64,000 nt of DNA from Macrostomum lignano (GCA_002269645.1 NIVC01001531.1:1-64000), one strand, 5' to 3'; positions 12,027 through 32,866 are shown, numbered from the stretch's first letter. The notes: generated by a model from the letters alone, not told the origin. A program made the numbers and translations.

Positions 12027-13603
12027 ATGACAGTAGTTCTGTCGTCTACCCTGGGTCAGACTGGGTAAGTGGACCAGAAACCCACATAGCTGATAGCAGT
12101 GTACACTGCAGCCTGTTTACCTTGCTCATTTAATGCATAAATCATTATACATTATTTTGATATTAATCTTGCCGGACTCGCTCGCATTGCAGGCCAACTA
12201 ACCGCTTGCAGCCCATGGCTGGTCAGGCTTCCTCTTCTAGTAGCAGCGGCGGCGGCAGCAATGGAGGAGCTTCCAACGATGGAGATCGGGAAATCTTTCG
12301 CGAATTAATGACTGTCTACCTGCAGAAAAGTGCCAGCAGCAATGTTCGATTCCAAGCAGCCTCAAACGGCAGTTATTATCGGCATGCCCAGCAGAAGCAG
12401 CAAAACGGCAAAAGCAGCAACAGTCCCCTGATGCAAGAGTTGTCTTCGGCAGTGATTGGCCTCACAAGCGACTACGAGTTGAGATATCGAGAGAAGCTAA
12501 ACGACCTCAGATCCAATTGGGTTATCGACGCCAATTGTCCCAGAGACAGTTTCAGACAAGTGCTAGACAATGTCTTCGTTGATAATTGCAATTGGGGTCG
12601 GGTTGTTACTATCTTTGTGTTCGGCTCTATGTTCCTCAGCCAGTGCCAACGCCAGGGGATCAGCGGGGTGACGGCTGCTGAAGTCTGCGACTGGTCAGTG
12701 GAGTACGTTGATAAGCGAGTGCTGCAGTGGATCAATCAGAATGGCGGCTGGGTGAGTGGCTTCAATCCTATTGTTTCTTAGATGCACGAAGTGCACAAGT
12801 GGTCTTTCATATCCTTGGAACTTTATATCTCCGTTAGAATTAGGCTTAGGGTTAGGCTTGTCGGAGGTATGACATGTCGGAGATATGGAGTGTCGGAGAT
12901 ATGAAGTGTCGGAGATATGAAGTGTCGGAGATGCGAAGTGTCGGAGATATGAAGTGTCGGAGATATGAAGTGTCGGAGATATGGAGTGTCGGAGATATGA
13001 AGTGTCGGAGATATGAAGTGTCGGAGATATGAAGTGTCGGAGATATGGAGTGTCGGAGATATGAAGTGTCGGAGATATGGAGTGTCGGAGATATGAAGTG
13101 TCGGAGATATGAAGTGTCGGAGATGCGAAGTGTCGGAGATATGGAGTGTCGGAGATATGAAGTGTCGGAGATATGAAGTGTCGGAGATGCGAAGTGTCGG
13201 AGATGCGAAGTGTCGGAGATGCGAAGTGTCGGAGATATGAAGTGTCGGAGATGCGAAGTGTCGGAGATATGAAATGTCGTAGATATGACGTGTCGGAGAT
13301 GCGAAGTGTCGGAGATATGAAATCGCCTCCGAACAAACCCCAAATGAATGTGGGTGCGCATTGAGTGAAACCAGCTTGGGTTCTCTGACAGAAATTACTT
13401 TATTTAGTAAAACAAAATGAGTATAAATATTTTTTATTCTCCTGCAGCTTGGCCTGATCCGCTTCTATAACGACGGCGAATCTGGTGGCCTTGGCAATGG
13501 GCCAAATAATAATAACAACGATAGCGGTGTGCTAACTAGACTACTGACAGTAGCCGGCGCTGGGCTGGCCATTGCATCACTGACATCGTTTCTGCGCGCT
13601 TGA
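12027..13603 (+). CDS. Multi-BH-domain Bcl-2 family apoptosis regulator with C-terminal TM anchor (about 250 aa; 230 aa if started at 12215)
   Basis: Exons 12027-12064, 12193-12751, 13448-13603, all in frame. BH4-like DREIFRELMTVYL, BH1 VFVDNCNWGRVVTIFVFG, BH2 WINQNGGW|LGLIRFY with the family's conserved phase-0 intron after GGW, hydrophobic tail LLTVAGAGLAIASLTSFLRA. Exon 1 is less certain than exons 2-3. Confidence 0.92.
12863..13325. repeat. 16-bp minisatellite GTCGGAGATATGAAGT in Bcl-2 intron 2
   Basis: Roughly 28 tandem copies; source of the spurious ORFs 12695-13361. Confidence 0.95.
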
Positions 13604-16416: not shown

Positions 16417-19179
16417 ATGGCACTGTTGAAACGAGCATGGATTGGTTACGATCGGTTGCTAAGGACGCATCCTGTTGTTACGCCCGCCCTGACAACCGGA
16501 GTGCTGATGGGCGTCGGAGATGTGGCTGCCCAGAGTCTGGAGGGGTACGGCTATCGGAGAATGAGTTTTCGCAGAACATCCAAGGTTTTCTTGTTGGGTG
16601 CCTGCGCTTATGTGAGTTTGCTTTTGCATGGCTTAGCAATAGATTAAAAGATTGGTTCTTCAACTGTTCTATCACCCAGTATGGGATAATATATCGGTTT
16701 AAGGAATCGTCCCTAATCCGTCCAAAGAATCCTTCCTAATCCACCCAAGAATCGCCCCTAATCCGTCCAAAGAATCCTCCCTAATCCACCCCAATAATCG
16801 CCCCTAATCCGTCCAAAGAATCCTCCCTAATCCACCCCAAGAATCGCCCCTAATCCGTCCAAAGAATCCTCCCTAATCCACCCCAATAATCGCCCCTAAT
16901 CCGTCCAAAGAATCCTCCCTAATCCACCCCAAGAATCGCCCCTAATCCGTCCAAAGAATCCTCCCTAATCCACCCCAAGAATCGCCCCTAATCCGTCCAA
17001 AGAATCCTCCCTAATCCACCCCAATAATCGCCCCTAATCCGTCCAAAGAATCCTCCCTAATCCACCCCAAGAATCGCCCCTAATCCGTCCAAAGAATCCT
17101 CCCTAATCCACCCCAAGAATCGCCCCTAATCCACCCCAAGAATCGCCCCTAATCTACCTCAAGAATCGCCCCTAATCCAGCCCAAGGATCGTCTCTAATC
17201 CACCCGAAGAATCGCCTACAATCCACCTCAAGAATCGCTAATTCACCTCAAGAATCGCCCCTAATCCGCCCCAATAATCGCCCCGAATTACCACTCCGAG
17301 AATCGCTTTTATTGTACAAGTTAGTATGAAAAATTACACAGAGGGCAAGAAGATAAAATTTATGAAATGTTCATACCGTATTTAGATATATCGGTCTCTC
17401 TGTGCTATGCTTACTGAAAAGAAAGTATTTCCGATTAATAAAACGGAAACATTGCCTACTTTTAATTGCTTTTAATAATTTTTAATGGCGCACATTTCCG
17501 TAAACAGTTTTCCTGACTTATCAACAGAAGCTTCTTTTTGAAGGTACATGCGCGCTTTATAGATTTGTTAGTAGTATAGTTAGTTCCAGTGTTGAAAAAT
17601 AAGCAGAAATTTTTTATTTTAATGCGTTAGTAACTTCATGTCTAGTGATAAATTAACATTTTGACCCACAAGTCATGACCCATCTAATGTTCATGACTTA
17701 TCTGATTTCTATGACCCACCTACTGTTCATGACTTATCTTCTGATTTCTATGATCCACAGGTCATGACCCACTATGTGTCTATGACTTGTCTGGTTTCTA
17801 TGTCCCACAGGTCATGACCCACCGTGTGTCTATGACTTATCTGATTTCTATGTCCCACAGGTCATGACCCACCGTGTGTCTATGACTTATCTGATTTCTA
17901 TGATCCACAGGTCATGACCCACTATGTGTCTATGACTTGTCTGGTTTCTATGTCCCACAGGTCATGACCCACCGTGTGTCTATGACTTATCTGATTTCTA
18001 TGTCCCACAGGTCATGACCCACCGTGTGTCTATGACTTATCTGATTTCTATGATCCACAGGTCATGACCCACTATGTGTCTATGACTTGTCTGGTTTCTA
18101 TGTCCCACAGGTCATGACCCACCGTGTGTCTATGACTTATCTGATTTCTATGTCCCACAGGTCATGACCCACCGTGTGTCTATGACTTATCTGATTTCTA
18201 TGACCCACAGGTCATGACCCACCATGTGTCTATGACTTATCTGATTTCTATGACCCACAGGTCATGACCCACCATGTGTCTATGACTTATCTGATTTCTA
18301 TGTCCCACAGGTCATCACCCACCTTGTATTCATGACTTATCTGACTCTATGACCCGTAGGTCATAAGCCACATAATGTTCAGAATAATGATTCCGGATCT
18401 AGATACTAGACCTAAAAGCCTCATTGATGCAAATTCTTTAACATTATTTTTCAATCACTGTTTGAATTCAAGCTTTTTAAACCAATTGCAGGGCCCAATG
18501 CTGAACAAGTGGTATCATTTCCTGTCGCACAGGTTCGCTAATCAAAGTCACCGAGTATTGAAGATGGTTGCCGCCGATCAGCTAATCATGGCCCCCGTGT
18601 CCGTGGCACTGTACGTGTCCGCTGTGTCCGCTCTGAACTCGGGCAGCCTTGCCGGCGTTGCCAGGCAGTTTGACCACTTTCCCGAGATAATGGCCACTAA
18701 TTATAAGGTTGGCGGGGCGGGGGGCTGTCTGTCTGTCTGTCTGTCTGTTTGTATGTCTGTATGTCTGTCTGTCTGTCTATCTGTCTGTCTGTCTGTCTGT
18801 CAGTCAGTCAGTATTTTCTTCCTTTCTCTTTACAAGGTGTTGATTTATCTTTCTTTCAGTTGTGGCCAGCAGTTCAGGTGTTAAACTTCACCTTTGCACC
18901 GAGTCATTTAAGGTAAATTTTTAAAACGATTTTTTTGGCTTTTCACATAAAATGATGCTCAATAAATGCCAGGCTAAATAAATGCATATTAATTACTTGC
19001 CACCTAGGCTGCTTGTGGTGAACTGCGTCACCATAGTGTGGAACACCTACCTGTCCTGGGTGGCTCACCGGCCGCGCTTAGCGGCTAAAAAGAAATTAAT
19101 AAAATCTGTGCCCACAGCCAGTGGAGTCAGCTTGGCCGCCGTTAATCATGACCAGTCGGCTTTGAAGCGTGATAACTAA
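16417..19179 (+). CDS. MPV17: MPV17/PMP22 family membrane protein (MPV17-like)
   Basis: Exons 16417-16611, 18492-18707, 18860-18912, 19008-19179, phases 0/0/2 consistent. Motifs LMGVGDVAAQ, GPMLNKWY, KMVAADQLIMAP, NYKLWPAVQVLNFTFAP and WNTYLSW are typical of MPV17. Confidence 0.92.
16704..17310. repeat. 23-bp minisatellite (same family as 14557-15362) in MPV17 intron 1
   Basis: Alternating CCCTAATCCGTCCAAAGAATCCT and CCCTAATCCACCCCAAGAATCGC units. Confidence 0.95.
17660..18370. repeat. 50-bp minisatellite in MPV17 intron 1
   Basis: GTCATGACCC recurs at 17761, 17811, 17861 and onward. Confidence 0.95.
18725..18810. repeat. (GTCT)n microsatellite in MPV17 intron 2
   Basis: Seen directly; begins about 17 nt after the donor at 18708. 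Confidence 0.95.
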
Positions 19180-19254: not shown

Positions 19255-19810
19255 AACTCGCTCCCCGTCCCCCAGCTAGCTGACTAATGTACACTCTCCC
19301 GTCCCCCCAATTAGCTGACTAATGTACACTCTCTCTCCCGTCCCCCCCAATTAGCTGACTAATTTACACTCTCTCTCCCGTCCCCCCAATTAGCTGACTA
19401 ATTTACACTCTCTCTCCCGTCCCCCCAATTAGCTGACTAATGTACACTCTCTCTCCCGTCCCCCCAATTAGCTGACTAATTTACACTCTCTCTCCCGTCC
19501 CCCCAATTAGCTGACTAATGTACACTCTCTCTCCCGTCCCCCCCAATTAGCTGACTAATGTACACTCTCTCTCCCGTCCCCCCCAATTAGCTGACTAATT
19601 TACACTCTCTCTCCCGTCCCCCCAATTATCTGACTAATTTACACTCTCTCTCCCGTCCCCCCCAATTAGCTGACTAATGTACACTCCCTCCCCGTCCCCC
19701 AGCTAGCCGGCTAATGTTCTCTCCCCCGTCTCCCAACTAGCCGACTAATGTACATTCTCTCCCCCGTCCGCCAGCTAGCCGACTAATGTACATTCTCTCC
19801 CCCGTCCCTC
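19255..19810. repeat. 39-40 bp minisatellite downstream of MPV17
   Basis: Unit approximately AATGTACACTCTCTCTCCCGTCCCCCCAATTAGCTGACT. Confidence 0.93.
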
Positions 19811-20509: not shown

Positions 20510-20760
20510 AATGCAGACTCCTCAACCCTGACCCCCTAACCATTCACTCCCCAACCCTTACCCCCTGCCCCAATGCACACTTCTTAACCCTTTACCCCAA
20601 TGTACGCTCCCCAACCCTTTACCCCAATGTACACTCCCCAACCCTTTACCCCAATGTACACTCCCCAACCCTTTACCCCAATGTACACTCCCCAACCCTT
20701 TACCCCAATGTACACTCCCCAACCCTTTACCCCAATGTACACTCCCAAACCTTACCTACT
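20510..20760. repeat. 27-bp minisatellite CCCCAACCCTTTACCCCAATGTACACT
   Basis: Tandem copies; yields the spurious (MYTPQPFTP)n ORF. Confidence 0.93.
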
Positions 20761-22495: not shown

Positions 22496-22587
22496 TCATT
22501 GCAAAAATATAGTTGAAAGTTTTATAAAATATTTGCGTGGAAACATTTCTGCGTATAAATTAAAGATAGCGCACCACAAAGCATTAA

Positions 22588-22818
22588 ATGAAAGCAGCAT
22601 ACTTTGGATCCGTTGCAGTGCTTGGTGGCATATCTTTGGCATTTTATTCCTGGTACCTGTTGCAGCACAACGACAAAATAGTGCATCCGACTTCCAAGCA
22701 ACGGATTGAAGAATTTGACCGTTCGTTGACGAAGCGATTTGAATTATTCGCGGGAAATTCGAGCAATAGCAGCAGCAGCAAAAGTAGCACAGTTGCTGAA
22801 ACGCCTAAGCGTGATTAG
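22588..22818 (+). CDS. Small single-pass membrane protein, 76 aa (smORF-A), uncharacterised
   Basis: ATG to TAG in a non-repetitive island between two minisatellites. N-terminal hydrophobic segment (AAYFGSVAVLGGISLAFYSWYLL) followed by a charged helix-like stretch. No family confidently recognised. Confidence 0.7.
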   Translation: MKAAYFGSVAVLGGISLAFYSWYLLQHNDKIVHPTSKQRIEEFDRSLTKRFELFAGNSSNSSSSKSSTVAETPKRD

Positions 22819-22844
22819 GTTAGTTGCGTGAGCTTGTGACGACC

Positions 22845-23510
22845 CCTAGATAATCAGGGGTGGTTGGCGGGCCCTAGATAATCAGGGGTGGTTGGCGGGC
22901 CCTGGATAATCAGGGGTGGTTTGCGAGCCTTGGATAATCAGGGGTGGTTGGTGAGCCCTAGATAATCTGGGGTGGTTGGCGAGCCCTAGATAATCAGGGG
23001 TTGGCGAGCCCTGGATAATTAGGGGTGGTTGGCGAGCCCTGGATAATTAGGGGTGGTTGGCGAGCCCTGGATAATCAGGAGTGGTTGGTGAGCCCTGGAT
23101 AATCAGGAGTGGTTGGTGAGCCTTGGATAATCAGGGGTGGTTGGTGAGCCTTGGATAATCAGGGGTGGTTGGCGAGCCCTGGATAATCAGGGGTGGTTGG
23201 CGAGCCCTGAATAATCAGGGGTGGTGGTGGGCCCTGGATAATCAAGGGTGGTGGTGGGCCCTGGATAATCAGGGGTGGTTGTTTGCGGGCCCTGGATAAT
23301 CAGGGGTGGTGGTGGGCCCTGGATAATCCGGGGTGGTTGTTTGCGGGCCCTGGATAATCAGGAGTAGTGGTGGGCCCTGGATAATCCGGGGTGGTTGTTT
23401 GCGGGCCCTGGATAATCAGGGTTGGTTTTTGCGCACCCTATATAATTAGGGGTGATTGTCGGGCCGTGGATTAGTAGGTGGTTGTGTAAATGGACCCTGG
23501 ATAATTGGGG
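22845..23510. repeat. 28-bp G-rich minisatellite GGATAATCAGGGGTGGTTGGCGAGCCCT
   Basis: TGGTTGGC recurs at 22861 and 22889; fills the gap between smORF-A and smORF-B. Confidence 0.95.
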
Positions 23511-23639
23511 TGAATGACTGACCGTAAACACTGGATCGGGGCAGCCAACGTGAAATGATTTTAATCCCTAATTAATTATTAAACTGCCTTACTAATTACA
23601 GGTATTCCTTCGTGCAAATCCTGAGGTTCCCCGGTTACT

Positions 23640-23921
23640 ATGCTACTATTTTTACGTCGATGTTTCTGGGAGGCGCGCGTGTTCACAGTTCAGCACCCGT
23701 TTCTGTCGCTCGCCACAATGCTTGGTTTAAGTGGGTCGGCCATCTACCTGTCAGAGGACCGTTATCGATTTTTAACCGCCCAATCTAGAGCCGAATTGCA
23801 AAGAATGGAGTCGCTAAGTTGGAGAGAAAGATGGTTTATTAATTTCAAAGATAAACAGCGACTGATTCTGCCGGAGTCTGTGTACCGCCGGCTGTTTGAT
23901 GAGGATGACAAGTCTGAGTGA
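23640..23921 (+). CDS. Small single-pass membrane protein (smORF-B), 93 aa unspliced or about 100 aa if spliced at 23918 into 24824
   Basis: ATG 38 nt after an acceptor CTAATTACAG| (ends 23601). Arg-containing N-terminus, hydrophobic segment PFLSLATMLGLSGSAIYL, charged C-terminus. A donor GA|GTGAGC overlaps the last codon and the stop. Confidence 0.72.
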   Translation: MLLFLRRCFWEARVFTVQHPFLSLATMLGLSGSAIYLSEDRYRFLTAQSRAELQRMESLSWRERWFINFKDKQRLILPESVYRRLFDEDDKSE

Positions 23922-24004
23922 GCTCCCGGTCCCACTGCTACCCAGACAGTTGTGTGCTGCGCTTTTGGGGATGTGTTTGGTTGGTTGAAGACACAGAAAT
24001 TAAG

Positions 24005-24765
24005 TATCGCCCCTCAAAAATCCTCTCAAGAATCGCCTCTCAAGAATCGCCCAAAAGTCCCAACTTTGAGACCGAAAGATCCCAAATTCGAAAATCGTGC
24101 TTAAAATCCCAAAATCGGAAATCGCTTCAAAAATCCCAAATTCGAAAATCGCCCCAGAAATCCCAAATTTTAGAATCGTCACAATAATCCCAAATCAAGT
24201 CGTCATGATACGGTTAGTTAAAGTTCATTGTTTTTTAGTTAAAATAATCTTAGTTTTGAATTACTTACTTTTAGTAGCCTGTGTAAAATCATTTATGCTG
24301 AAAATTGAAAAGTACAGTACGAGCATAAGTATGTTGATCTTACCATTTTGTAGAAAGCGAAACTAACTCAAGTAAAAACTCGTTGAATTTCCTAATTTCA
24401 TGCTAAATGCACATTATGCTTTTTTATTTCATAATTTTTATACAGTTGATATAGAGATGAGGTTAGGCTATAGGTGAAATGAGTATATAGAGATGAGATT
24501 AGCCTACATATGAGATTGTAAGCACAGACATGAGACTAAGCTACAGGAGAGTTTGTGAGCACAGTCATGAGACTAAGCTACAGGTGAGATTGTAAACACA
24601 GACATGAGATTAAACTACAGGTGAGATTGTTAGCACAGACATGAGATTGAGCTAAAGGTGAGATTATGAGCACAGACATGAGATTAAGCTACAGGTGGGA
24701 GTGTGAGCTCAGACATGATATTAAACTACTGGTGAGATTGTGAGCACCGACATGAGATTATGAGC
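24005..24765. repeat. Degenerate 23-bp-family repeat (24005-24190) and 37-bp minisatellite (24455-24765)
   Basis: AAGAATCGCC/AAAATCCCAAAT units; CTACAGG recurs at 24541 and 24578. Confidence 0.85.
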
Positions 24766-24828
24766 CATTGCATCACAAATACAATGCAATAGCCTTAAGT
24801 CTATGTTCCCAATTGCTGTTCAGCAGCA

Positions 24829-25434
24829 ATGCCAACCCTACTTACTAGCAGTAGTATGATGAGTACTATGCAGCGTATTAGACCGCTACTACAGCTGAGA
24901 CACCTGAGCAGCGAACGGTACAGCTATTGGCGCGGATTTCTCGATCGCCTAGCAACAGAGGCCAATGCCTTGACAACAGAGCCTTCAGCTAGTGGTAAAC
25001 AGGCCACCACAGCTGACTCATACCTGCTGCCTGAGTCGAGAGATCTCGCTAGGAAAGCCCGGCCGATGCAGAACGGCGGCCTGCTGCCGCGGCTAAAGGA
25101 TCCCAGACACGAGGCGCCGGTGGTGATGCCGCCGTATCAGCCTATTGATGACTGGCACCCGAAGCAGGCTCTGTTTGGTCAGAACGACTACATTGACATA
25201 CTGGGCGAGGGCGAGGTCACGCCGAAAGATCTCTACGTCGGGCCCAATTACACTCGGCTGAGTCGGGGCAGCGAGTTTCTGAGAAATTTCCGGCGCCTAT
25301 CGGTGCAAGACGAGTATATGAAGGAGTTTATGCCCACTAGGCGGTCCATTATTCAGCTGAATAATTACAATTCGCTCAAGTATAGAAATAAGAGAAGGAA
25401 TAATGTGTTCCCTAAGTATAGGGAAGAGCCTTGA
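24829..25434 (+). CDS. MRPL51: Mitochondrial ribosomal protein mL51
   Basis: Single exon, 201 aa. Basic, Ser/Arg-rich N-terminus, then W-x-x-K-x-ALFGQNDYIDILG, GPNYTRLSRGSEF and a basic C-terminus, matching metazoan mL51 as I recall it. Alternative starts at ATG 24856/24859/24868. Confidence 0.85.
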   Translation: MPTLLTSSSMMSTMQRIRPLLQLRHLSSERYSYWRGFLDRLATEANALTTEPSASGKQATTADSYLLPESRDLARKARPMQNGGLLPRLKDPRHEAPVVMPPYQPIDDWHPKQALFGQNDYIDILGEGEVTPKDLYVGPNYTRLSRGSEFLRNFRRLSVQDEYMKEFMPTRRSIIQLNNYNSLKYRNKRRNNVFPKYREEP

Positions 25435-25565
25435 GGTTAAGCAGAATTTGCCTTGGTTAGTTCCTGACAATTATTCAATGACTGAAATTTGCTTCGTTGT
25501 ATTTGAATATTGTTCTATGCTAGTGTTGTTTTGATTGGCATTTTTTAGCTTGTTGTCTTGTTAGG

Positions 25566-26090
25566 CTTTCCATCTTCCTTTACCCTCTTCTTTCCTCTCT
25601 CTACCCTCTCCTCACCCCTCTTTACCCTCTCCTCGCCCCTCTCTACCCTCTTCTCTCCCCTCTTTACCCTCTCCTCGCCCCTCTTTACCCTCTCCTCGCC
25701 CCTCTCTACCCTCTTCTCTCCCCTCTCTACCCTCTTCTCTCCCCTCTCTACCCTCTTGTCTCCCCTCTTTACCCTCTCCTCGCCCCTCTCTAACCTCTTC
25801 TCTCCCCTCTTTACCCTCTCCTCGCCCGTCTTTACCCTCTCCTCGCCCCTCTTTACCCTCTCCTCGCCCCTCTCTACCCTCTTCTCTCCCCTCTCTACCC
25901 TCTTCTCTCCCCTCTTTACCCTCTCCTCGCCCCTCTCTAACCTCTTCTCTCCCCTCTTTACCCTCTCCTCGCCCCTCTTTACCCTCTCCTCGCCCCTCTC
26001 TACCCTCTTCTCTCCCCTCTTTACCCTCTCTTCTCTCCTTCTCCCCTCCGCTCTCTTTACCATATTTCACCCTCTTTACCCTCTCTCTAT
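25566..26090. repeat. Polypyrimidine 21-bp repeat CTCTTTACCCTCTCCTCGCCC
   Basis: About 520 bp, almost entirely C/T on the plus strand. Confidence 0.95.
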
Positions 26091-26529
26091 CTCCCTTCCA
26101 TCATTTCCTTTTCATTCTCTTTCATTGCTAAGCTACAACACAAGAAATTCGAACTCACTTCAGCCTATTTTATGATCTGTAAAAACAAAAAATACACCCT
26201 AGAGAAAAAAAACATTTTTTCAGCGAAAAAATAAAAATTGATGTATAATCTAATGAAAAGCAATTTAAAACACCTCTGAACGTTGAAAATTGTTAATTTT
26301 TGTACGTCAAAAACTTATTTTCAGTAGAGACTAAAACTAATTTATAATTGATTAATTTGCTTCTATCTGACTTGATCATTTTATTAAATTGAATGGGTGC
26401 CTGGCGAACTCAAGTGATTGATATGATAAAATTGTAAATGATTTTGCAAATTATCATACTCGTTTCCGAAATTAAATCAAATTATTTTGTATAGAAAAAC
26501 ACTGGTAAAATGTGTTGGCGATTCACTTT

Positions 26530-27005
26530 AATGTACACTCGCTCCCTTCTGAGCCCCATTCCAACCCCACCCAATGTACACTCGCTCCCGACTGAGCCCC
26601 ATTCCAACCCCACCCAATGTACACTCGCTCCCGACTGAGCCCCATTCCAACCCCACCCCAATGTACACTCGCTCCCGACTGAGCCCCATTCCAACCCCAC
26701 CCCAATGTACACTCGCTCCCGACTGAGCCCCATTCCAACCCCACCCCAATGTACACTCGCTCCCGACTAAGCCCCATTCCAACCCCACCCAATGTACACT
26801 CGCTCCCGACTAAGCCCCATTCCAACCCCACCCCAATGTACACTCGCTCCCGACTAAGCCCCATTCCAACCCCACCCAATGTACACTCGCTGCCGACTGA
26901 GCCCCATTCCAACCCCACCCCAATGTACACTCGCTCCCGACTAAGCCCCATTCCAATCTACCCCAATGTACACTCGCTGCCGACTGAGCCCCATTCCAAT
27001 CCACC
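26530..27005. repeat. 43-44 bp minisatellite (CAATGTACACTCGCTCCCGACTGAGCCCCATTCCAACCCCACC)
   Basis: CTCGCTC recurs at 26581 and 26624. Confidence 0.95.
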
Positions 27006-27098
27006 CCTATTTATACATTGCGGTGCTTCAGACTTTGTGTCACAAGTTTGTAAAGCTTCATAGAAAAAAATTTCTGAATCAAAACAAAAAAGCAAACC

Positions 27099-30000
27099 AT
27101 GACAGGATCTGCTACTACCCGACAGGTACCTGTCAATCAAAGCTCATCATCAGGTTTCATTGGACGAGCAATTCTTGTGTTGATAATTAGTTTCATTGTC
27201 TACAGCTTGTTGTCGGCCTACTTTCCTGCAAGTACTGACAGTATCGCACCTGATGAATCAGGAAGCTTAAAAGAAGACCAAGTATCATTAGTTACCAGCG
27301 CTGTAGCATTCGAAAATGATCGACTTAAAGTCTATCGGACTGTATCTTCGAACAGTGGAAAAATAAAGAAAAAATCTGAGCTTATTGGCGAATTCAGTCT
27401 GGCATGGAGTGGAGAGAAATTGTCCGTTCAATCCAAGGTTTGTTTTGTTATATTACTTGATTTTCTTGGAATTCTAAGAAATTTTGCTACGATTCTTGGA
27501 AAGTGTCGGCTCATTCTTAGTATACTTATGCAAGTACATGTAGTATTATTCGTAGCTAATTTTCAAGTGTACATTATCTCTGTTTCTTGGAATCAATTTA
27601 CATGTAACTGCATGTAAGTGTAAAACTATTTCTTGGAATGTGACGCTCTATGTTAGCATTTGAAGTTTTATTTCTTAGAATATGAAGCTCGATCTGCTTC
27701 CCAGAATGTGAAAGCATATTTCTTATAATGTGGAGCTGCATTTCTTAGAATGTAAAGCTTTATTTTTAAAACGTGGAGCTGTATTTCTTAGAATGTGGAG
27801 CTGTATTTCTTGGAATGTGGAGCTGCATTTCCTGGAATGTGGAGCTGTATTTCTTGGAATGTGGAGCTGCATTTCTTGGAATGTGGAGCTGTATTTCTTA
27901 GAATTTGGAGCTTTATTTCTGAATATTTTGGTAATAGAAGCTATATTTCCTAAGATGTAGAGCTCTGTTTCTTGAAAAGCGAAGCTCTCTTTTTTAGAAA
28001 GTTGATCCGCTTCCAAAATAGATCATATTGACTCTAAGGATTTTTGATATAAATTCTTTGGGTGTGTCTCTATATGATTCTTAGAATGTGTCACTCTGAT
28101 TCTTAGAATTTATCTCTCTGATTCTTAGAATTTGTCTCTCTGATTCTTAGAATTTGTCTCTCTGATTCTTAGAATTTGTCTCTCTGATTCTTAGAATTTG
28201 TCACTCTGATTCTTAAAATTTGTCACTGATTATTAAAATTTGTCACTCTGATTCTTAGAATTTGTCTCTCTGACTCTTAGAATGTGTCCCTCTGCTTCGT
28301 AAAATGTTTCACTCTGATTTTTGAAGTGTCTAGCACTGATTCTTAGAAAATACCATTTAAATTATTTGCAAATCAACAAAAATTACTGTCACATTCCAGT
28401 CCGACCAGCAACCCAGCAGTTCTCGTCCTACAGATGCACGTGACCTGTCAATCACCTGGAGCAACGGAGGCAGCAGTCTTACTGTCACCACGCTACCCCA
28501 GTCGTTTATTAATTCTCGATTCTTGAGCTGCCACCGCGCCGTCCTGACAACGGCAGCAAAAGAGTCTGCCAGTCTCTGCCTCGAGCTGCCGGCAGCCTCA
28601 GTCTACGGCGGCGGGGCCGCGTTCGACCAGCGCTGGCCAATCAACAGCCAGTCGATGCCAAGTCAAGCCTACGTCAGCAACGATTTCGCGGAACTCACCG
28701 GTGCTAAACGATCCGATCTCTGGGGCGGATTCGTTGAACGACTCTGGCTAACGTCTCGGGGCCTGCTGGTGCATGTGGACGATGCCACACCGCTGTCGGT
28801 TGGTCAAGAAGCCGATCGTAGGCTATGCTTGACTGCCACACCCGATGACGAGGCTTATCTTTGGCGATCGAATCCTAGGGATTATTTGAATGTCACAATC
28901 TGTGCGGCTGACAGCGCCAAGGAGGCTTACTTGGCTGCGCACAGCTGGTGAGAGCTCTCTGGCTTTTACACGTATCTATGGGCGATACTAACTCTTACCT
29001 AATGCCCACTTGTAAGTCAGGGCGACTGTACACCCCCTGTGCCGGTGTCTGTCCGCTCTGGGATCAGGGATCGGGCATGACTGCTTGCCTGTCTGCAAAA
29101 ACTTATAGGCTTTCATTCCGTGTCCTCCACTAGCCCTCAGTGTCCTCCACTAGCCTTCAGTGTCCTCCACTAGCCTTCAGTGTCCTCCACTAGCCTTCAG
29201 TGTCCTCCACTAGCCTTCAGTGTCCTCCACTAGCCTTCAGTGTCCTCCACTAGCCTTCAGTGTCCTCCACTAGCCTTCAGTGTCCTCCACTAGCCTTCAG
29301 TGTCCTCCACTAACCTTCAGTGTCCTCCACTAGCCTTCAGTGTCCTCCACTAGCCTTCAGTGTCCTCCACTAGCCTTCAGTGTCCTCCACTAGCCTTCAG
29401 TGTCCTCCAATAGCCTTCAGTGTCCTCCACTAGCCTTCAGTGTCCTCCACTAGCCTTCAGTGTCCTCCACTAGCCTTCAGTGTCCTCCACTAGCCTTCAG
29501 TGTCCTCCACTAGCCTTCAGTGTCCTCCACTAGCCTTCAGTGTCCTCCACTAGCCTTCAATGTCCTCCACTAGCCTTCAGTGTCCTCCACTAGCCTTCAG
29601 TGTCCTCCAATAGCCTTCAGTGTCCTCCACTAGCCTTCAGTGTCCTCCACTAGCCTTCAGTGTCCTCCACTAGCCTTCAGTGTCCTCCACTAGCCTTCAG
29701 TGTCCTCCACTAGCCTTCAGTGTCCTCCACTAGCCTTCAGTGTCCTCCACTAGCCTTCAGTGTCCTCCACTAGCCTTCAGTGTCCTCCACTAGCCTTCAG
29801 TGTCCTCCACTAGCCTTCAGTGTCCTCCACTAGCCTTCAGTGTCCTCCACTAGCCTTCAGTGTCCTCCACTAGCCTTCAGTGTCCTCCACTAGCCTTCAG
29901 TGTCCTCCACTAGCCTTCAGTGTCCTCCACTAGCCTTCAGTGTCCTCCACTAGCCTTCAGTGTCCTCCACTAGCCTTCAGTGTCCTCCAATAGCCTTCAG

Positions 30001-32167
30001 TGTCCTCCACTAGCCTTCAGTGTCCTCCACTAGCCTTCAGTGTCCTCCACTAGCCTTCAGTGTCCTCCACTAGCCTTCAGTGTCCTCCACTAGCCTTCAG
30101 TGTCCTCCACTAGCCTTCAGTGTCCTCCACTAGCCTTCAGTGTCCTCCAATAGCCTTCAGTGTCCTCCACTAGCCTTCAGTGTCCTCCACTAGCCTTCAG
30201 TGTCCTCCACTAGCCTTCAGTGTCCTCCACTAGCCTTCAGTGTCCTCCACTAGCCTTCAGTGTCCTCCACTAGCCTTCAGTGTCCTCCACTAGCCTTCAG
30301 TGTGTCCTCCACTAACTTTCAGTGTCCTACAGTAATCTTCAGTGTCCTACAATAACCTTCAGTGTCCTCCACTAGCCTTCAGTGTCCTCCACTAGCCTTC
30401 AGTGTCCTCCACTAGCCTTCAGTGTGTCCTCCACTAACTTTCAGTGTCCTACAGTAATCTTCAGTGTCCTACAATAACCTTCAGTGTCCTACTGTAATCT
30501 TCAGTGTCCTCCACTAACCTTCACTATCCTACACTAACCTTCATTGTCCTACAGTAATCTTCAGTGTCCTCCACTAACCTTCAGTGTCCTCCACTAACCT
30601 TCACTATCCTACACTAACCTTCATTGTCCTACAGTAATCTTCAGTGTCCTCCACTAACCTTCAGTGTCCTCCACTAACCTTCACTATCCTACACTAACCT
30701 TCATTGTCCTACAGTAATCTTCAGTGTCCTCCACTAACCTTCAGTGTCCTACACTAACCTTCACTATCCTACACTAACCTTCATTGTCCTACAGTAATCT
30801 TCAGTGTCCTCCACTAACCTTCAGTGTCCTCCACTAACCTTCACTATCCTACACTAACCTTCATTGTCCTACAGTAATCTTCAGTGTCCTCCACTAACCT
30901 TCACTATCCTACACTAACCTTCATTGTCCTACAGTAATCTTCAGTGTCCTCCACTAACCTTCAGTGTCCTCCACTAACCTTCACTATCCTACACTAACCT
31001 TCATTGTCCTACAGTAATCTTCAGTGTCCTCCACTAACCTTCAGTGTCCTACAATAACCTTCAGTGTCATACAGTAATCTTCAGTGTCCTCCACTAACCT
31101 TCAATGTCCTCAAATGCCCTTCAATGCTCTACTAACGTTCAATGTCCTCAAATGACCTTCAATGCTCTCCACTAACCTTCAATATCGTCCAATGACCTTC
31201 TGGTGTCCTCCACTGGTCTTTAATGTTCTCTACTATTAGCTTCGTCACTACAACGTTTAATGTTATTCACTAATTTTAAATGTCGACTAACCTTGAATGT
31301 CCTCCAATGGCCCCAATGTATTCCACTATCCTTCCATGCGACACATGCAATGCGAAGCAATCAAACAATCTTTCCTCGCAACAGGCTGTACACTCGTCCA
31401 ACATCGTCTCCCGACCGTCGCATCCTTCGCGAACCAATCTGGTGCACGTGGGCCAGGCACAAGACGGCGGTGGCTCAATCTGATGTGGAATCTCTGGCTA
31501 ATGACGTCACTAGGCTTGGCTTTCCCGCCAGTCAGATTGAAATTGACGATCGGTACACGATTAACTACGGCGATTTGGCATGGGATCCGATTAAGTTTCC
31601 TAATCCTGCCGAGATGACGGCCAAACTAAAGTACATCGGGCACCGGGTCACGACTTGGATTGTGCCATTTTTTAATAAGAACACTTCGGCCTATGATGAA
31701 GCTGCGGCTGCTGGATATCTTTTGATTGAAAGCGTTAACGACAACAACAACAGATCAGCCGATATTCTCTGGTGGCAGGGAGTCGGAGGTCAGCTGGACC
31801 CGACCAACCCCAGCGCCGTCAGCTGGTTCGCGAACCGGCTGGCCAGATTTCGTCAGCAATTTGGCATCGAATCGTTTAAATTCGACGCTGGCGAGGTGTA
31901 CTATCTGAGGGGGGCTCGAACTCAGGCCCCGCTGGAGGCGCCGATGCAGTTCACGACGGCCTACGTTCAGCAGGTGGCGGCAAAGTTCGGCGGAGCTGTC
32001 GAAGTTCGAGCCGGCTATCGAACTCAGTCAGTACCGGTTGCGACGCGGATGTTTGACAAGGACAGCCACTGGGGCGGGAGGAACGGACTGCGATCCATTG
32101 TGCCCAATGCGCTGATGCTGTCCATGGCGGGGTACCACTTTGTGATGCCCGACATGATTGGCGGTGA

Positions 32168-32251
<84 letters not shown>

Positions 32252-32254
32252 TAC

Positions 32255-32339
<85 letters not shown>

Positions 32340-32866
32340 TTCTGGGGCTCCAGAGTCAACAACATTGCATCCAATTTCCAGGAAACGCGTACTCCGAGGA
32401 CTCCATGGAAGGCGCCAGGCCGGAACGTGAGCTGTACATCCGCTGGATGCAGCTCAGCAGTTTTCTACCAATCGTGCAGTTTTCAATCGCACCCTGGGAC
32501 TATGACCAAGAAGTGACGGACATTGCTCTGAAGACGCTGAAGCTCAGAGCGGAAGTGTACATCCCCGCGTTGGAAGCGGCTTTGACCCAGTTGTTCAGCA
32601 CGGGAGAGCCTGTCACCAGACCGCTGTGGTGGGCTTCGGACGGTACAGTCGATGACGTCAGACTTTGGACAGTGGACGATCAGTTCCTTGTTGGCGACTC
32701 GCTGCTAGTGGCTCCGGTAATTCGACAAAGCACAGTTGCTAGGGACATCTTGCTGCCGTCGGGGCGATGGAAGGACGGCTACAGCGGCCGACTGGTTGAT
32801 GGACCGCTGGTGCTGAAGGACCACCCGGCCAAACTGGATATGGTGCCGCATTTTATCAGAGTGTAG
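27099..32866 (+). CDS. MYORG: GH31 glycosidase, MYORG/KIAA1161-like type II membrane protein (716 aa)
   Basis: Exons 27099-27437, 28400-28947, 31385-32163, 32382-32866; phases 0/2/1 consistent; 2151 nt. N-terminal TM ([19 protein letters not shown]), [16 protein letters not shown], nucleophile motif [25 protein letters not shown]|[26 protein letters not shown]. Confidence 0.93.
27620..28350. repeat. Two related 22-bp repeats in MYORG intron 1
   Basis: TTCTTGGAATGTGGAGCTGCAT (about 27620-27980) and TTCTTAGAATTTGTCTCTCTGA (about 28060-28350). Confidence 0.9.
29125..31250. repeat. 20-bp minisatellite CCACTAGCCTTCAGTGTCCT in MYORG intron 2
   Basis: Near-perfect to about 30300, then variant 20-mers in higher-order blocks, decaying toward the acceptor. 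Confidence 0.97.
32168..32340. repeat. (GTCT)n microsatellite filling MYORG intron 3
   Basis: Starts within the donor GTGAGTCTGTCTG at 32164. Confidence 0.97.

What the first reader, a model, noticed from the sequence alone, without database searches (positions are those of the whole stretch)
22588..27437. Candidate spliced polycistronic unit: splice donors sit at the stop codons of consecutive ORFs (smORF-A, smORF-B, MRPL51, possibly MYORG)
Seen: smORF-A ends GAT TAG|GTTAGT, a donor at 22819 with the same hexamer as RNF123 intron 10. The next acceptor CTAATTACAG| (23601) lies 38 nt before smORF-B's ATG, whose frame is closed upstream by TGA at 23622, so A and B cannot fuse. smORF-B ends TCT GA|GTGAGC (donor 23918). 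Splicing to the tandem acceptor CAG|CAG| (24823/24826) adds DSNANPTY* (or DNANPTY*), stopping at 24848 in a different frame from MRPL51, overlapping its first ATG (24829) and 7 nt before its ATG 24856. MRPL51 ends TGA G|GTTAAG (weak donor, 25436) and an acceptor GTGCTTCAG| (27031) precedes the MYORG ATG. All three spacers are filled with minisatellites, like the true introns in this window. I saw no AATAAA in the A-B or B-MRPL51 spacers. The other complete genes here lack a donor at the stop. Inference: one pre-mRNA is either cis-spliced into a di/tri-cistronic mRNA or resolved by SL trans-splicing at the same acceptors. Established: SL-resolved operons occur in nematodes, tunicates and flatworms, and bicistronic mRNAs encoding mitochondrial microproteins occur in vertebrates.
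Basis: partly seen in the sequence, partly recalled or inferred. Interest (0 to 1): 0.8.

Follow-up and report, generated by a model that had tools for sequence, protein, structure and literature searches.

The report
Flatworm gene cluster, not tricistronic mRNA
This is an ordinary co-oriented gene cluster of the flatworm Macrostomum lignano, a species known for spliced-leader operons with repeat-filled spacers. Only the first of the three proposed "stop-codon splice donors" looks better than chance.

Summary
The window is Macrostomum lignano contig NIVC01001531.1. [quoted passage not shown]

Three of its supporting arguments fail:
- Minisatellites cover 36% of the window, including intergenic DNA.
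- ATTAAA occurs in both "AATAAA-free" spacers, and the terminal gene MYORG also lacks AATAAA.
- A control single-exon gene (PQ-loop) carries a better "donor" at its stop (G-TGA-G = GTGAG) than smORF-B or MRPL51.

The deposited annotation keeps smORF-B unspliced at 93 aa. It gives MRPL51 and MYORG different transcriptional-unit names.

Only smORF-A's TAG|GTTAGT is of real-intron strength (chance about 0.6%). That exon also has no ATG other than its first, and it follows TATAAA boxes. So 22819-23601 is probably a real intron that makes exon A the 5' exon of the smORF-B mRNA.

The B-MRPL51 and MRPL51-MYORG spacers are most likely 3'UTR plus outron or promoter. They would be resolved by polyadenylation and SL trans-splicing, or the genes are transcribed separately. 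No RNA evidence could be reached with these tools.

smORF-A and smORF-B have no detectable homologues.

The parts
22523..22559 (+). Two TATAAA motifs (22523-22528 and 22554-22559), 65 and 34 nt upstream of smORF-A's ATG. Candidate promoter of the first exon.
   Evidence: Motif only; no TSS data.
22588..22818 (+). smORF-A, 76 codons, not annotated in GenBank. Predicted N-terminal long helix, a second helix and a Ser-rich tail. TAA lies immediately upstream of the ATG. There is no other ATG in any frame.
   Evidence: absent from the collection. (codon-usage frame score 0.113, 5th of 68). (helices 3-32 and 36-54). (0 ATG; P = 0.013). (one synonymous change among three copies).
22819..23601 (+). 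Probable cis intron: tag|GTTAGT ... CTAATTACAG|. It contains a 28-nt minisatellite at 22840-23471 and ATTAAA at 23578-23583. Alternatively it is smORF-A's 3'UTR plus the outron of B.
   Evidence: (donor score 7.02, within the 5.5-9.35 range of three verified introns). (TTACAG matches the published trans-acceptor motif YTNCAG).
23640..23921 (+). smORF-B, 93 aa, annotated as a hypothetical protein on all three paralogous contigs. Orphan.
   Evidence: (exhaustive phmmer finds only itself plus two repetitive hits). (0 changes in 282 nt among the copies). (score 0.195, 2nd of 68).
23918..23923 (+). Donor-like GTGAGC formed by G + TGA stop + G. Judged incidental.
   Evidence: the PQ-loop control scores higher. 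(spliced products absent from the collection).
23922..24823 (+). B-MRPL51 spacer: arrays at 24002-24051, 24075-24195 and 24489-24760; PAS-like hexamers AGTAAA 24371, ATTAAA 24609 and 24720, AATACA 24778; tandem acceptor GTTCAG|CAG| ending at 24823 and 24826.
   Evidence: (459 nt after subtracting repeats).
24829..25434 (+). MRPL51 (mitochondrial ribosomal protein L51), single exon. GenBank CDS is 5'-partial from 24820. A second in-frame ATG is at 24856.
   Evidence: PF10244, E = 1.3e-18. (204-aa product in the collection; the paralog is PAA52562.1, Mlig028470g2, partial). (4 synonymous and 1 non-synonymous change among copies).
25435..27031 (+). MRPL51-MYORG spacer: weak donor-like GTTAAG at 25436; arrays at 25578-26039 and 26530-27007; AATAAA at 26230; acceptor GTGCTTCAG| ending at 27031.
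   Evidence: donor score 2.68. (657 nt after subtracting repeats).
27099..32866 (+). GH31 / MYORG-like gene. Exons 27099(27078)-27437, 28400-28947, 31385-32163 and 32382-32866. All introns are GT..AG and each holds a minisatellite.
   Evidence: PF01055, PF21365. (reconstructed 723-aa product found by exact look-up: PAA66791.1, Mlig006082g1, partial).

Best explanation
The stretch is a run of co-oriented genes on a Macrostomum lignano contig. It is built the way this species' published gene clusters and operons are built: short unique spacers inflated by minisatellites, with SL-type acceptors just upstream of the downstream start codons.

**A-to-B (inferred).** The first proposed junction is probably a genuine cis intron. 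A TATA-type promoter near 22523-22559 would drive an exon that contains smORF-A. The donor tag|GTTAGT at 22819 would splice to TTACAG| at 23601. Exon A would then be the AUG-poor 5' exon of the smORF-B mRNA, either as a first cistron or as a leader. The same acceptor may alternatively take the spliced leader.

**B-to-MRPL51 and MRPL51-to-MYORG (inferred).** These are not introns of a polycistronic mRNA. They are 3'UTR plus outron or promoter. Each downstream gene matures as its own mRNA by polyadenylation of the upstream message and SL trans-splicing at or near the CAG acceptors, or possibly from its own start site.

**Donor-like motifs.** The motifs at the B and MRPL51 stops are by-products of stop-codon sequence.

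**Shown versus inferred.**
- Shown: the sequence features, the species, the annotation state, and the chance levels.
- Inferred: every RNA-processing step.
For: **Species and its known biology.**
- L004 equals window 13640-33921 on NIVC01001531.1. NIVC is the M. lignano Mlig_3_7 assembly.
- Published for this species: 30% of genes SL trans-spliced; 15% in operons; operon spacers inflated by repeats, with a repeat-adjusted mode near 100 bp and a 1-kb threshold; trans-acceptor motif YTNCAG; 18% of operons start with a non-trans-spliced gene.

**Cluster architecture.**
- Repeat-adjusted spacers are 189, 464 and 724 nt.
- Acceptors TTACAG| and CTTCAG| match YTNCAG. GTTCAG|CAG| is a near match.
- No uATG lies between any acceptor and its start codon.

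**A-to-B intron.**
- The donor scores 7.02, against 5.5-9.35 for the three verified MYORG introns. The chance of such a site at a stop is 0.6%.
- The A ORF has zero further ATG. Shuffles average 4.2 (P = 0.013), and 0 of 54 coding chunks of the same length are ATG-free.
- TATAAA lies at -65 and -34 from A's ATG.
- smORF-A is not annotated as a gene of its own, which fits it being hidden in B's transcript.
- Sharing of acceptors between cis- and SL trans-splicing is widespread in flatworms (PMC12582326).

**B and MRPL51 donors are incidental.**
- The PQ-loop control has a stronger one.
- The deposited B product is the unspliced 93 aa on all three contigs, and the spliced forms are absent from the collection.
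- AATAAA lies in the third spacer, and ATTAAA in the first two.
Against: - No RNA data (SL reads, junction reads, 3' ends, TSS) could be reached, so no processing step is demonstrated.
- The deposited annotation gives MRPL51 and MYORG different transcriptional-unit prefixes.
- Their 5'-partial CDS starts imply model 5' ends at 24818-24820 and 27076-27078. These are not at the predicted acceptors, which fits separate start sites at least as well as SL trans-splicing.
- YTNCAG occurs about 3 times per kb, so a match within 70 nt of an ATG has a 10-20% chance each.
- ATTAAA 24 nt before acceptor 1 would equally suit polyadenylation of a separate smORF-A mRNA followed by SL addition to B.
- smORF-A's coding status is only suggestive (4 of 67 other ORFs score as high). 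No homologue was found for A (word-index search only) or for B.
- The donor weight matrix was written from memory of human splice sites.
Confidence: 0.5

Rival explanations
1. Independent genes. smORF-B (with or without exon A), MRPL51 and MYORG each have their own transcription start close to the ATG and their own poly(A) site in the spacer. There is no shared precursor, and SL trans-splicing is not needed.
For: - GenBank names put MRPL51 (Mlig028470) and MYORG (Mlig006082) in different transcriptional units.
- The 5'-partial CDS starts at 24820 and 27078 are reproduced in the paralogous copies. They imply model 5' ends that do not follow an AG.
- PAS-like hexamers exist in every spacer.
- 70% of M. 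lignano genes are not trans-spliced.
Against: - The authors state that transcriptional units split in repeat-rich operon spacers, so separate names are weak evidence.
- Conserved genes are 45% trans-spliced in this species.
- Good CAG acceptors sit 2-67 nt before each ATG.
- No TATA-like element lies within 40 nt of the implied starts.
Confidence: 0.3
2. One pre-mRNA is cis-spliced at all three stop-codon donors into a di- or tri-cistronic mature mRNA. Downstream cistrons are translated by reinitiation or leaky scanning.
For: - Three consecutive ORFs have a GT within 2 nt of the stop, paired with a CAG acceptor just before the next ATG.
- The naive joint chance is below 1e-4.
- M. lignano tolerates weak donors: the verified MYORG intron 1 uses AAG|GTTTGT.
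Against: - The deposited B protein keeps its own TGA, and the 99- and 100-aa spliced forms are absent from the collection.
- The B donor is just G-TGA-G, and the unrelated PQ-loop gene has a stronger one.
- The MRPL51 donor (2.68) scores below every verified intron.
- B contains many internal ATGs, so ribosomes could not scan through to MRPL51.
- In flatworms, cis-splicing is lowest at operon-resolving acceptors.
Confidence: 0.05
3. smORF-A is not a gene product. The ORF is a chance open frame in a non-coding 5' leader exon, or in untranscribed DNA. The TSS may lie at or after its ATG.
For: - It is not called in either public annotation.
- No Pfam or PDB hit.
- TATAAA at -34 would place a TSS within a few nt of the ATG.
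- ATG depletion is typical of 5'UTRs.
Against: - A 76-codon open frame that exactly fills ATG-to-donor has about a 3% chance (inference).
- The in-frame codon score of 0.113 exceeds all 76 shifted-frame controls, and the two other frames score -0.40 and -0.69.
- The only substitution among the three copies is synonymous.
- The predicted fold is a clean helix-turn-helix (pLDDT 72).
Confidence: 0.3

Closest known systems
SL trans-spliced operons of Macrostomum lignano (Wudarski et al. 2017; Ustyantsev & Berezikov 2021)
   Same: Same species. The genes are co-oriented neighbours, and their spacers are swollen by simple repeats but under 1 kb once repeats are subtracted. YTNCAG-type acceptors lie just before the downstream ATGs. 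A possible non-trans-spliced first gene has a TATA promoter. The members are conserved housekeeping genes (MRPL51).
   Different: No SL reads or precursor transcript could be checked. The deposited annotation does not join MRPL51 and MYORG in one transcriptional unit, and its 5' ends are not at the predicted acceptors.
Shared cis/trans acceptors and complex 5'UTR splicing in flatworms (Calvelo et al. 2023/2025, PMC12582326)
   Same: A 5' exon with its own donor (exon A) faces an acceptor that also fits the SL acceptor motif, directly upstream of a coding region.
   Different: That behaviour was described in parasitic flatworms and is not documented at this locus. Here the upstream exon carries a 76-codon ORF ending exactly at the donor.
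Spliced bicistronic mRNAs such as SNURF-SNRPN, or uORF-encoded microproteins (own knowledge)
   Same: If exon A is spliced to exon B, two non-overlapping ORFs would lie on one capped, spliced mRNA. The first cistron would be AUG-depleted, which favours leaky scanning.
   Different: No junction or translation evidence. Both ORFs are orphans with unknown function.
SL1-type operons of C. elegans and Ciona operons, which have no intercistronic gap (described in PMC12582326)
   Same: ATTAAA lies 24 nt before acceptor 1. A poly(A) site of A could therefore abut the acceptor of B.
   Different: Purely positional. S. mansoni operons mostly do have intercistronic gaps (median 99 bp), and M. lignano 3' ends could not be inspected.

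Membership tests
SL trans-spliced operon (M. lignano criteria of PMC8629364) | The organism performs SL trans-splicing and has operons | tested here: met
   The window is identical to NIVC01001531.1 of M. lignano Mlig_3_7. Literature.
SL trans-spliced operon (M. lignano criteria of PMC8629364) | Adjacent genes lie on the same strand, with none on the opposite strand between them | tested here: met
   A, B, MRPL51 and MYORG are all on the + strand. The first opposite-strand gene (PQ-loop) comes after MYORG.
SL trans-spliced operon (M. lignano criteria of PMC8629364) | Repeat-adjusted intergenic distance under 1 kb | tested here: met
   189, 464 and 724 nt from CDS to CDS after subtracting TRF arrays.
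SL trans-spliced operon (M. lignano criteria of PMC8629364) | The downstream gene carries the spliced leader (SL-containing reads at its acceptor) | not testable with these tools
   Motif level only. TTACAG| and CTTCAG| fit YTNCAG, and GTTCAG|CAG| nearly fits. The chance of such a match is 10-20% each.
SL trans-spliced operon (M. lignano criteria of PMC8629364) | One precursor transcript or transcriptional unit spans the genes | tested here: inconclusive
   GenBank names differ (Mlig028470 against Mlig006082). The authors say units split at repeat-rich spacers. A called 94-aa ORF inside the CT-rich array on paralog L005 suggests + strand transcription of that spacer.
Cis-spliced bi- or polycistronic mRNA | Donor and acceptor of real-intron quality flank each spacer | tested here: inconclusive
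   A scores 7.02, within the range of verified introns. B scores 3.95 and MRPL51 2.68, both below all three verified introns and below the PQ-loop control at 4.84.
Cis-spliced bi- or polycistronic mRNA | The mature transcript or product reflects the junction | tested here: not met
   For B to MRPL51, the deposited product is the unspliced 93 aa on three contigs, and the spliced 99- and 100-aa forms are absent. For A to B this is not testable, because the stop is retained either way.
Cis-spliced bi- or polycistronic mRNA | Both ORFs are genuine coding sequences | tested here: inconclusive
   Codon-frame scores: A 0.113, B 0.195; coding chunks 0.24 +/- 0.11; other ORFs -0.02 +/- 0.11. No homologues. 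The paralogs are too similar for dN/dS.
MRPL51 (Pfam PF10244) | Significant match to the family profile over its full length | tested here: met
   E = 1.3e-18; profile positions 1-90 of 93.
GH31 / MYORG-like glycosidase | GH31 TIM-barrel and C-terminal domains; N-terminal membrane anchor | tested here: met
   PF01055 (E = 1.5e-20) and PF21365 (E = 2.7e-16). A hydrophobic stretch, [24 protein letters not shown], lies in exon 1. Orthology to MYORG specifically was not tested.

The most novel reading that the evidence does not exclude
smORF-A and smORF-B are two lineage-specific membrane microproteins translated from one TATA-driven, cis-spliced bicistronic mRNA.
- The donor sits exactly at A's stop codon.
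- The first cistron is purged of all other AUGs, so B's start is the second AUG.
- A's AUG may lie only a few nt from the cap, which would make scanning leaky.
- Competition between cis-splicing and SL addition at the shared acceptor (23601) would set the A:B expression ratio.
Probability: 0.2. Interest if true: 0.5.

Novelty: new member of a known kind. Interest (0 to 1): 0.22.

Why it matters
If the cluster is an SL-type operon, it is one more instance of something already catalogued genome-wide in M. lignano. Its main practical value is for annotation:
- An unannotated 76-codon ORF.
- An intact MRPL51 copy left uncalled on one paralogous contig.
- 5'-partial gene models.

The one point with some wider interest is the A-B pair. 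It would be a clean, testable candidate for a spliced bicistronic mRNA, or for a cis/trans-splicing switch at a single acceptor. M. lignano is a transgenesis-capable flatworm, so such a switch could be dissected by reporter constructs.

The check also gives a caution for sequence-only scans. G-TGA-G and G-TAA-G stops mimic consensus donors, and in this genome minisatellites do not discriminate introns from intergenic DNA.

Tried and rejected
1. I first read "Mlig028470g2" as "second gene of a transcriptional unit" and inferred a joint unit. Reconstructing the 723-aa MYORG product and looking up all three copies showed that g1, g2 and g3 number the paralogous copies in scaffold order. The inference was withdrawn.
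2. Homologue searches:
   - smORF-B found only itself. The exhaustive phmmer search added two repetitive hits.
   - smORF-A found nothing.
   - The MYORG exon-1 query missed its own protein, so negative results from that tool are weak.
3. Pfam and PDB sequence searches found nothing for A or B.
4. A remembered resemblance of A to SMIM20 gave no BLASTP alignment and was dropped.
5. The single-sequence AlphaFold model of B is poor (pLDDT 51), so no fold search was run.
6. Rfam found no RNA family anywhere in the window. The SL sequence itself is not in the window.
7. The supplements of PMC5816591 and PMC5730564 hold no gene-level entry for this locus. No paper mentions Mlig028470.
8. The three paralogous loci are 98.5-100% identical in unique sequence, too close for conservation tests of splice sites.
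9. Brute-force enumeration of MYORG exon chains gave thousands of solutions or timed out. Pfam-guided boundaries solved it instead.
10. Explaining the 5'-partial CDS starts as offsets from SL acceptors failed. No consistent offset exists.

Full report
**Identity of the sequence.** An exact-protein look-up of smORF-B returned three contigs of GenBank assembly GCA_002269645.1. Locus L004 from NIVC01001531.1 is base-for-base identical to window 13640-33921. The window is therefore positions 1-64000 of that contig. [quoted passage not shown] Two further contigs (L005, L006) carry collinear copies. These are 98.5-100% identical in unique sequence and differ mainly in array lengths, as expected for this neopolyploid line.

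**What is known about this genome.**
- About 30% of genes receive a 35-nt spliced leader that ends in AUG.
- About 15% of genes are assigned to operons, and 18% of operons start with a non-trans-spliced gene.
- The trans-acceptor motif is [T/C]TNCAG, and the main cis donor is GT[G/A]AG.
- Simple repeats inflate operon spacers. After subtracting repeats the distance mode is about 100 bp, and 1 kb is used as the threshold.
- The authors also note that assembled transcriptional units tend to break in these repeat-rich spacers (PMC8629364).
- Almost 7% of assembled transcripts are multi-gene precursors.

**Check of the observation.** MRPL51 is confirmed (PF10244, E = 1.3e-18). The downstream gene is GH31 (PF01055 and PF21365). 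I reconstructed its CDS as 27078/27099-27437, 28400-28947, 31385-32163 and 32382-32866. Exact look-up found the 723-aa product for all three copies. This yields three verified introns with donors AAG|GTTTGT, CTG|GTGAGA and GCG|GTGAGT.

**Supporting arguments that fail.**
- ATTAAA occurs at 23578 (24 nt before acceptor 1), 24609 and 24720, and AATAAA occurs at 26230. MYORG must end before the convergent PQ-loop gene, yet it has no AATAAA in its 890-nt downstream region. PQ-loop has AATAAA 83 nt after its stop.
- The single-exon PQ-loop gene ends CTG TGA GGG, which gives gct|GTGAGG. A stop TGA or TAA flanked by G on both sides is automatically GTRAG, and that is all smORF-B's donor is. The same pattern also marks ordinary phase-2 coding exons, such as MYORG exon 2.

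**Donor strength.** I scored donors with a human-like weight matrix written from memory.

| Site | Score |
|---|---|
| smORF-A stop | 7.02 |
| PQ-loop stop (control) | 4.84 |
| smORF-B stop | 3.95 |
| MRPL51 stop | 2.68 |
| MYORG stop | 0.37 |
| Three verified MYORG introns | 5.5, 8.7, 9.35 |

The chance of a site at least as strong within six positions of a stop is 0.6% for A, about 3% for B (an underestimate, given the stop's own letters) and about 5% for MRPL51. Among 148 ATG-ORFs of at least 40 codons, 5 have GTNAG at the stop. Those 5 include A, B, two MYORG exon frames (27099-27617 and exon 2) and PQ-loop.

**What the deposited annotation says.**
- smORF-B is called as a complete 93-aa protein on all three contigs. 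The two products expected from splicing at 23918 are absent from the 15-billion-protein collection. The assembled transcripts therefore do not use that donor as the main form.
- smORF-A is not called anywhere.
- MRPL51 is PAA52562.1 "Mlig028470g2, partial" on L006. The MYORG copies are "Mlig006082g1/g2/g3, partial" in scaffold order.
- The g-number therefore counts copies, not position in a unit. The different prefixes mean that MRPL51 and MYORG were not assembled into one transcriptional unit.
- Both CDSs are 5'-partial, starting at 24820 and 27078. This implies model 5' ends at 24818-24820 and 27076-27078.
- Neither position follows an AG. 27078 lies 45 nt downstream of 27031, and an in-frame TGA at 27075-27077 would have given a complete CDS had the model started at 27032. 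I could not explain these ends. Candidates are capped start sites, mapping ends of de novo transcripts, or oligo-dT internal priming at the A-rich run 27081-27092.

**The smORFs.**
- Neither has a Pfam or PDB relative.
- An exhaustive phmmer of B against 1.84 billion representatives found only itself and two repetitive proteins.
- A codon-usage frame test was trained on about 2,000 codons of confident CDS from the window. A scored 0.113 and B scored 0.195 in frame. Their shifted frames scored -0.24 to -0.69.
- Leave-one-out coding chunks average 0.24 +/- 0.11. Shifted frames average -0.40 +/- 0.18 with a maximum of 0.02.
- Among 67 other ORFs of at least 60 codons, 4 score at least as high as A and 1 as high as B.
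- Among the three copies, A has one synonymous change in 231 nt and B has none in 282 nt. MRPL51 has four synonymous changes and one non-synonymous change.
- A is predicted as a long N-terminal helix, a second helix and a disordered Ser-rich tail (pLDDT 72). B models poorly.
- B is therefore probably coding. A is plausibly coding but unproven.

**The A-B junction is different from the other two.**
- Its donor is strong.
- The 228 nt of smORF-A after its ATG contain no ATG in any frame. Shuffles average 4.2 (P = 0.013), and none of 54 coding chunks of the same length is ATG-free. The 38 nt between acceptor 1 and B's ATG are also ATG-free.
- Two TATAAA motifs lie 65 and 34 nt before A's ATG. There is no YTNCAG within 1.7 kb upstream. 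Exon A therefore looks promoter-proximal rather than trans-spliced.
- Together these suggest that 22819-23601 is a real intron and that exon A is the leader of the B mRNA. B's AUG would be the second AUG, or the first if transcription starts at or after 22588.
- This also explains why A is not annotated, since a longest-ORF caller would pick B.
- In parasitic flatworms, cis- and SL trans-splicing share acceptors at an average of 66% of SL acceptor sites. Sharing is common at 5'UTR acceptors and least common at operon-resolving acceptors (PMC12582326). Alternative SL addition at 23601 would therefore be unsurprising.
- The rival reading is that A is polyadenylated using ATTAAA at 23578 and B is SL trans-spliced right behind it. 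It cannot be excluded.

**The other two spacers.**
- Acceptor 3 (CTTCAG|) matches YTNCAG, and acceptor 2 (GTTCAG|CAG|) nearly does. The motif occurs about 3 times per kb.
- An SL joined at these sites would put its AUG out of frame, opening a 43-codon, an 11-12-codon and a 53-codon upstream ORF. This is not an argument against them. In S. mansoni the SL AUG is in frame in only 28% of targets (PMC9851317).
- At MRPL51 the SL-AUG ORF would end in a TGA that overlaps the in-frame ATG at 24856 (ATGA).
- Given the species' statistics, an SL-resolved arrangement is the most natural reading. Independent transcription is a serious rival because of the annotation's separate units and 5' ends.
- Cis-splicing at the B and MRPL51 donors is unlikely. 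The reasons are weak or incidental donors, an unspliced deposited product, many internal AUGs in B, and AATAAA in the third spacer.

**Comparison with known systems and verdict.**
- The locus works like, and by the sequence-level criteria qualifies as a candidate for, a published M. lignano SL-type operon or gene cluster. The two defining RNA-level features, SL on the downstream genes and one precursor, were not testable or were inconclusive.
- It is not a member of the cis-spliced polycistronic class for B-MRPL51-MYORG. It may be one for A-B.
- Novelty is low: a new, partly unannotated member of a known kind.
- Interest is 0.22. The most novel surviving reading is a spliced A-B bicistronic mRNA with a cis/trans switch, at about 0.2 probability.

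Noticed in passing
window 24820 and 27078 (also L005 14826; L006 11894 and 14268): The GenBank CDSs of MRPL51 and MYORG are 5'-partial and start 9 and 21 nt upstream of the ATGs. Neither position follows an AG. 27078 directly follows an in-frame TGA and precedes an A-rich run (27081-27092). The origin of these model boundaries is unexplained.
   Followed up: partly
window 12215-12778 (+): A Bcl-2 family ORF (PF00452, E = 4e-21) has two YTNCAG acceptors ending 22 and 3 nt before its ATG. An SL joined at the nearer one would put the SL AUG in frame.
   Followed up: partly
window about 16417-16644 (+), possibly further exons to about 19400: A probable Mpv17/PMP22-like first exon (MALLKRAWIGYDRLLRTHP...) is not annotated on this contig. 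Paralog L006 has an annotated PF04117 gene upstream of smORF-B on the same strand. Pfam did not hit this exon alone.
   Followed up: partly
L005 12798-13412 and 13825-14109: On paralog L005 the MRPL51 ORF is intact, with a protein identical to L006's, but it is not called. Instead a 94-aa ORF inside the CT-rich minisatellite downstream is called as a gene. That implies + strand transcript coverage of this spacer.
   Followed up: partly
window 19256-19808, 20568-20751, 26530-27007: Three different minisatellite arrays share an AATGTACAC(T)C core, which suggests a related repeat family.
   Followed up: no
window 24489-24760: Most units of the 37-nt array (4 of about 7) carry CTACAG|G, three of them as CTACAG|GTGAG. 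That is an acceptor-like motif followed by a donor-like motif.
   Followed up: no
window 22613-22618 and 22660-22665: Two strong YTNCAG motifs lie inside smORF-A (GTTGCAG| and GTTGCAG|). An SL joined after 22665 would place its AUG in frame with the last 50 codons of smORF-A, which lack the hydrophobic helix.
   Followed up: no
window 24824-24859: An SL joined at 24823 or 24826 opens MQ(Q)CQPYLLAVV*. Its TGA (24857-24859) overlaps the in-frame MRPL51 ATG at 24856 (ATGA), a stop-start overlap.
   Followed up: no
window 48391 (-): GTTAGT follows a 135-codon open frame on the minus strand in the RNF123-like region. MYORG intron 1 (GTTTGT) also has T at +3.
   Followed up: partly
tool behaviour: The word-index homologue search did not return the 723-aa GH31 protein when queried with its own exon 1 (113 aa). 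Negative results from that tool should therefore be read cautiously.
   Followed up: yes
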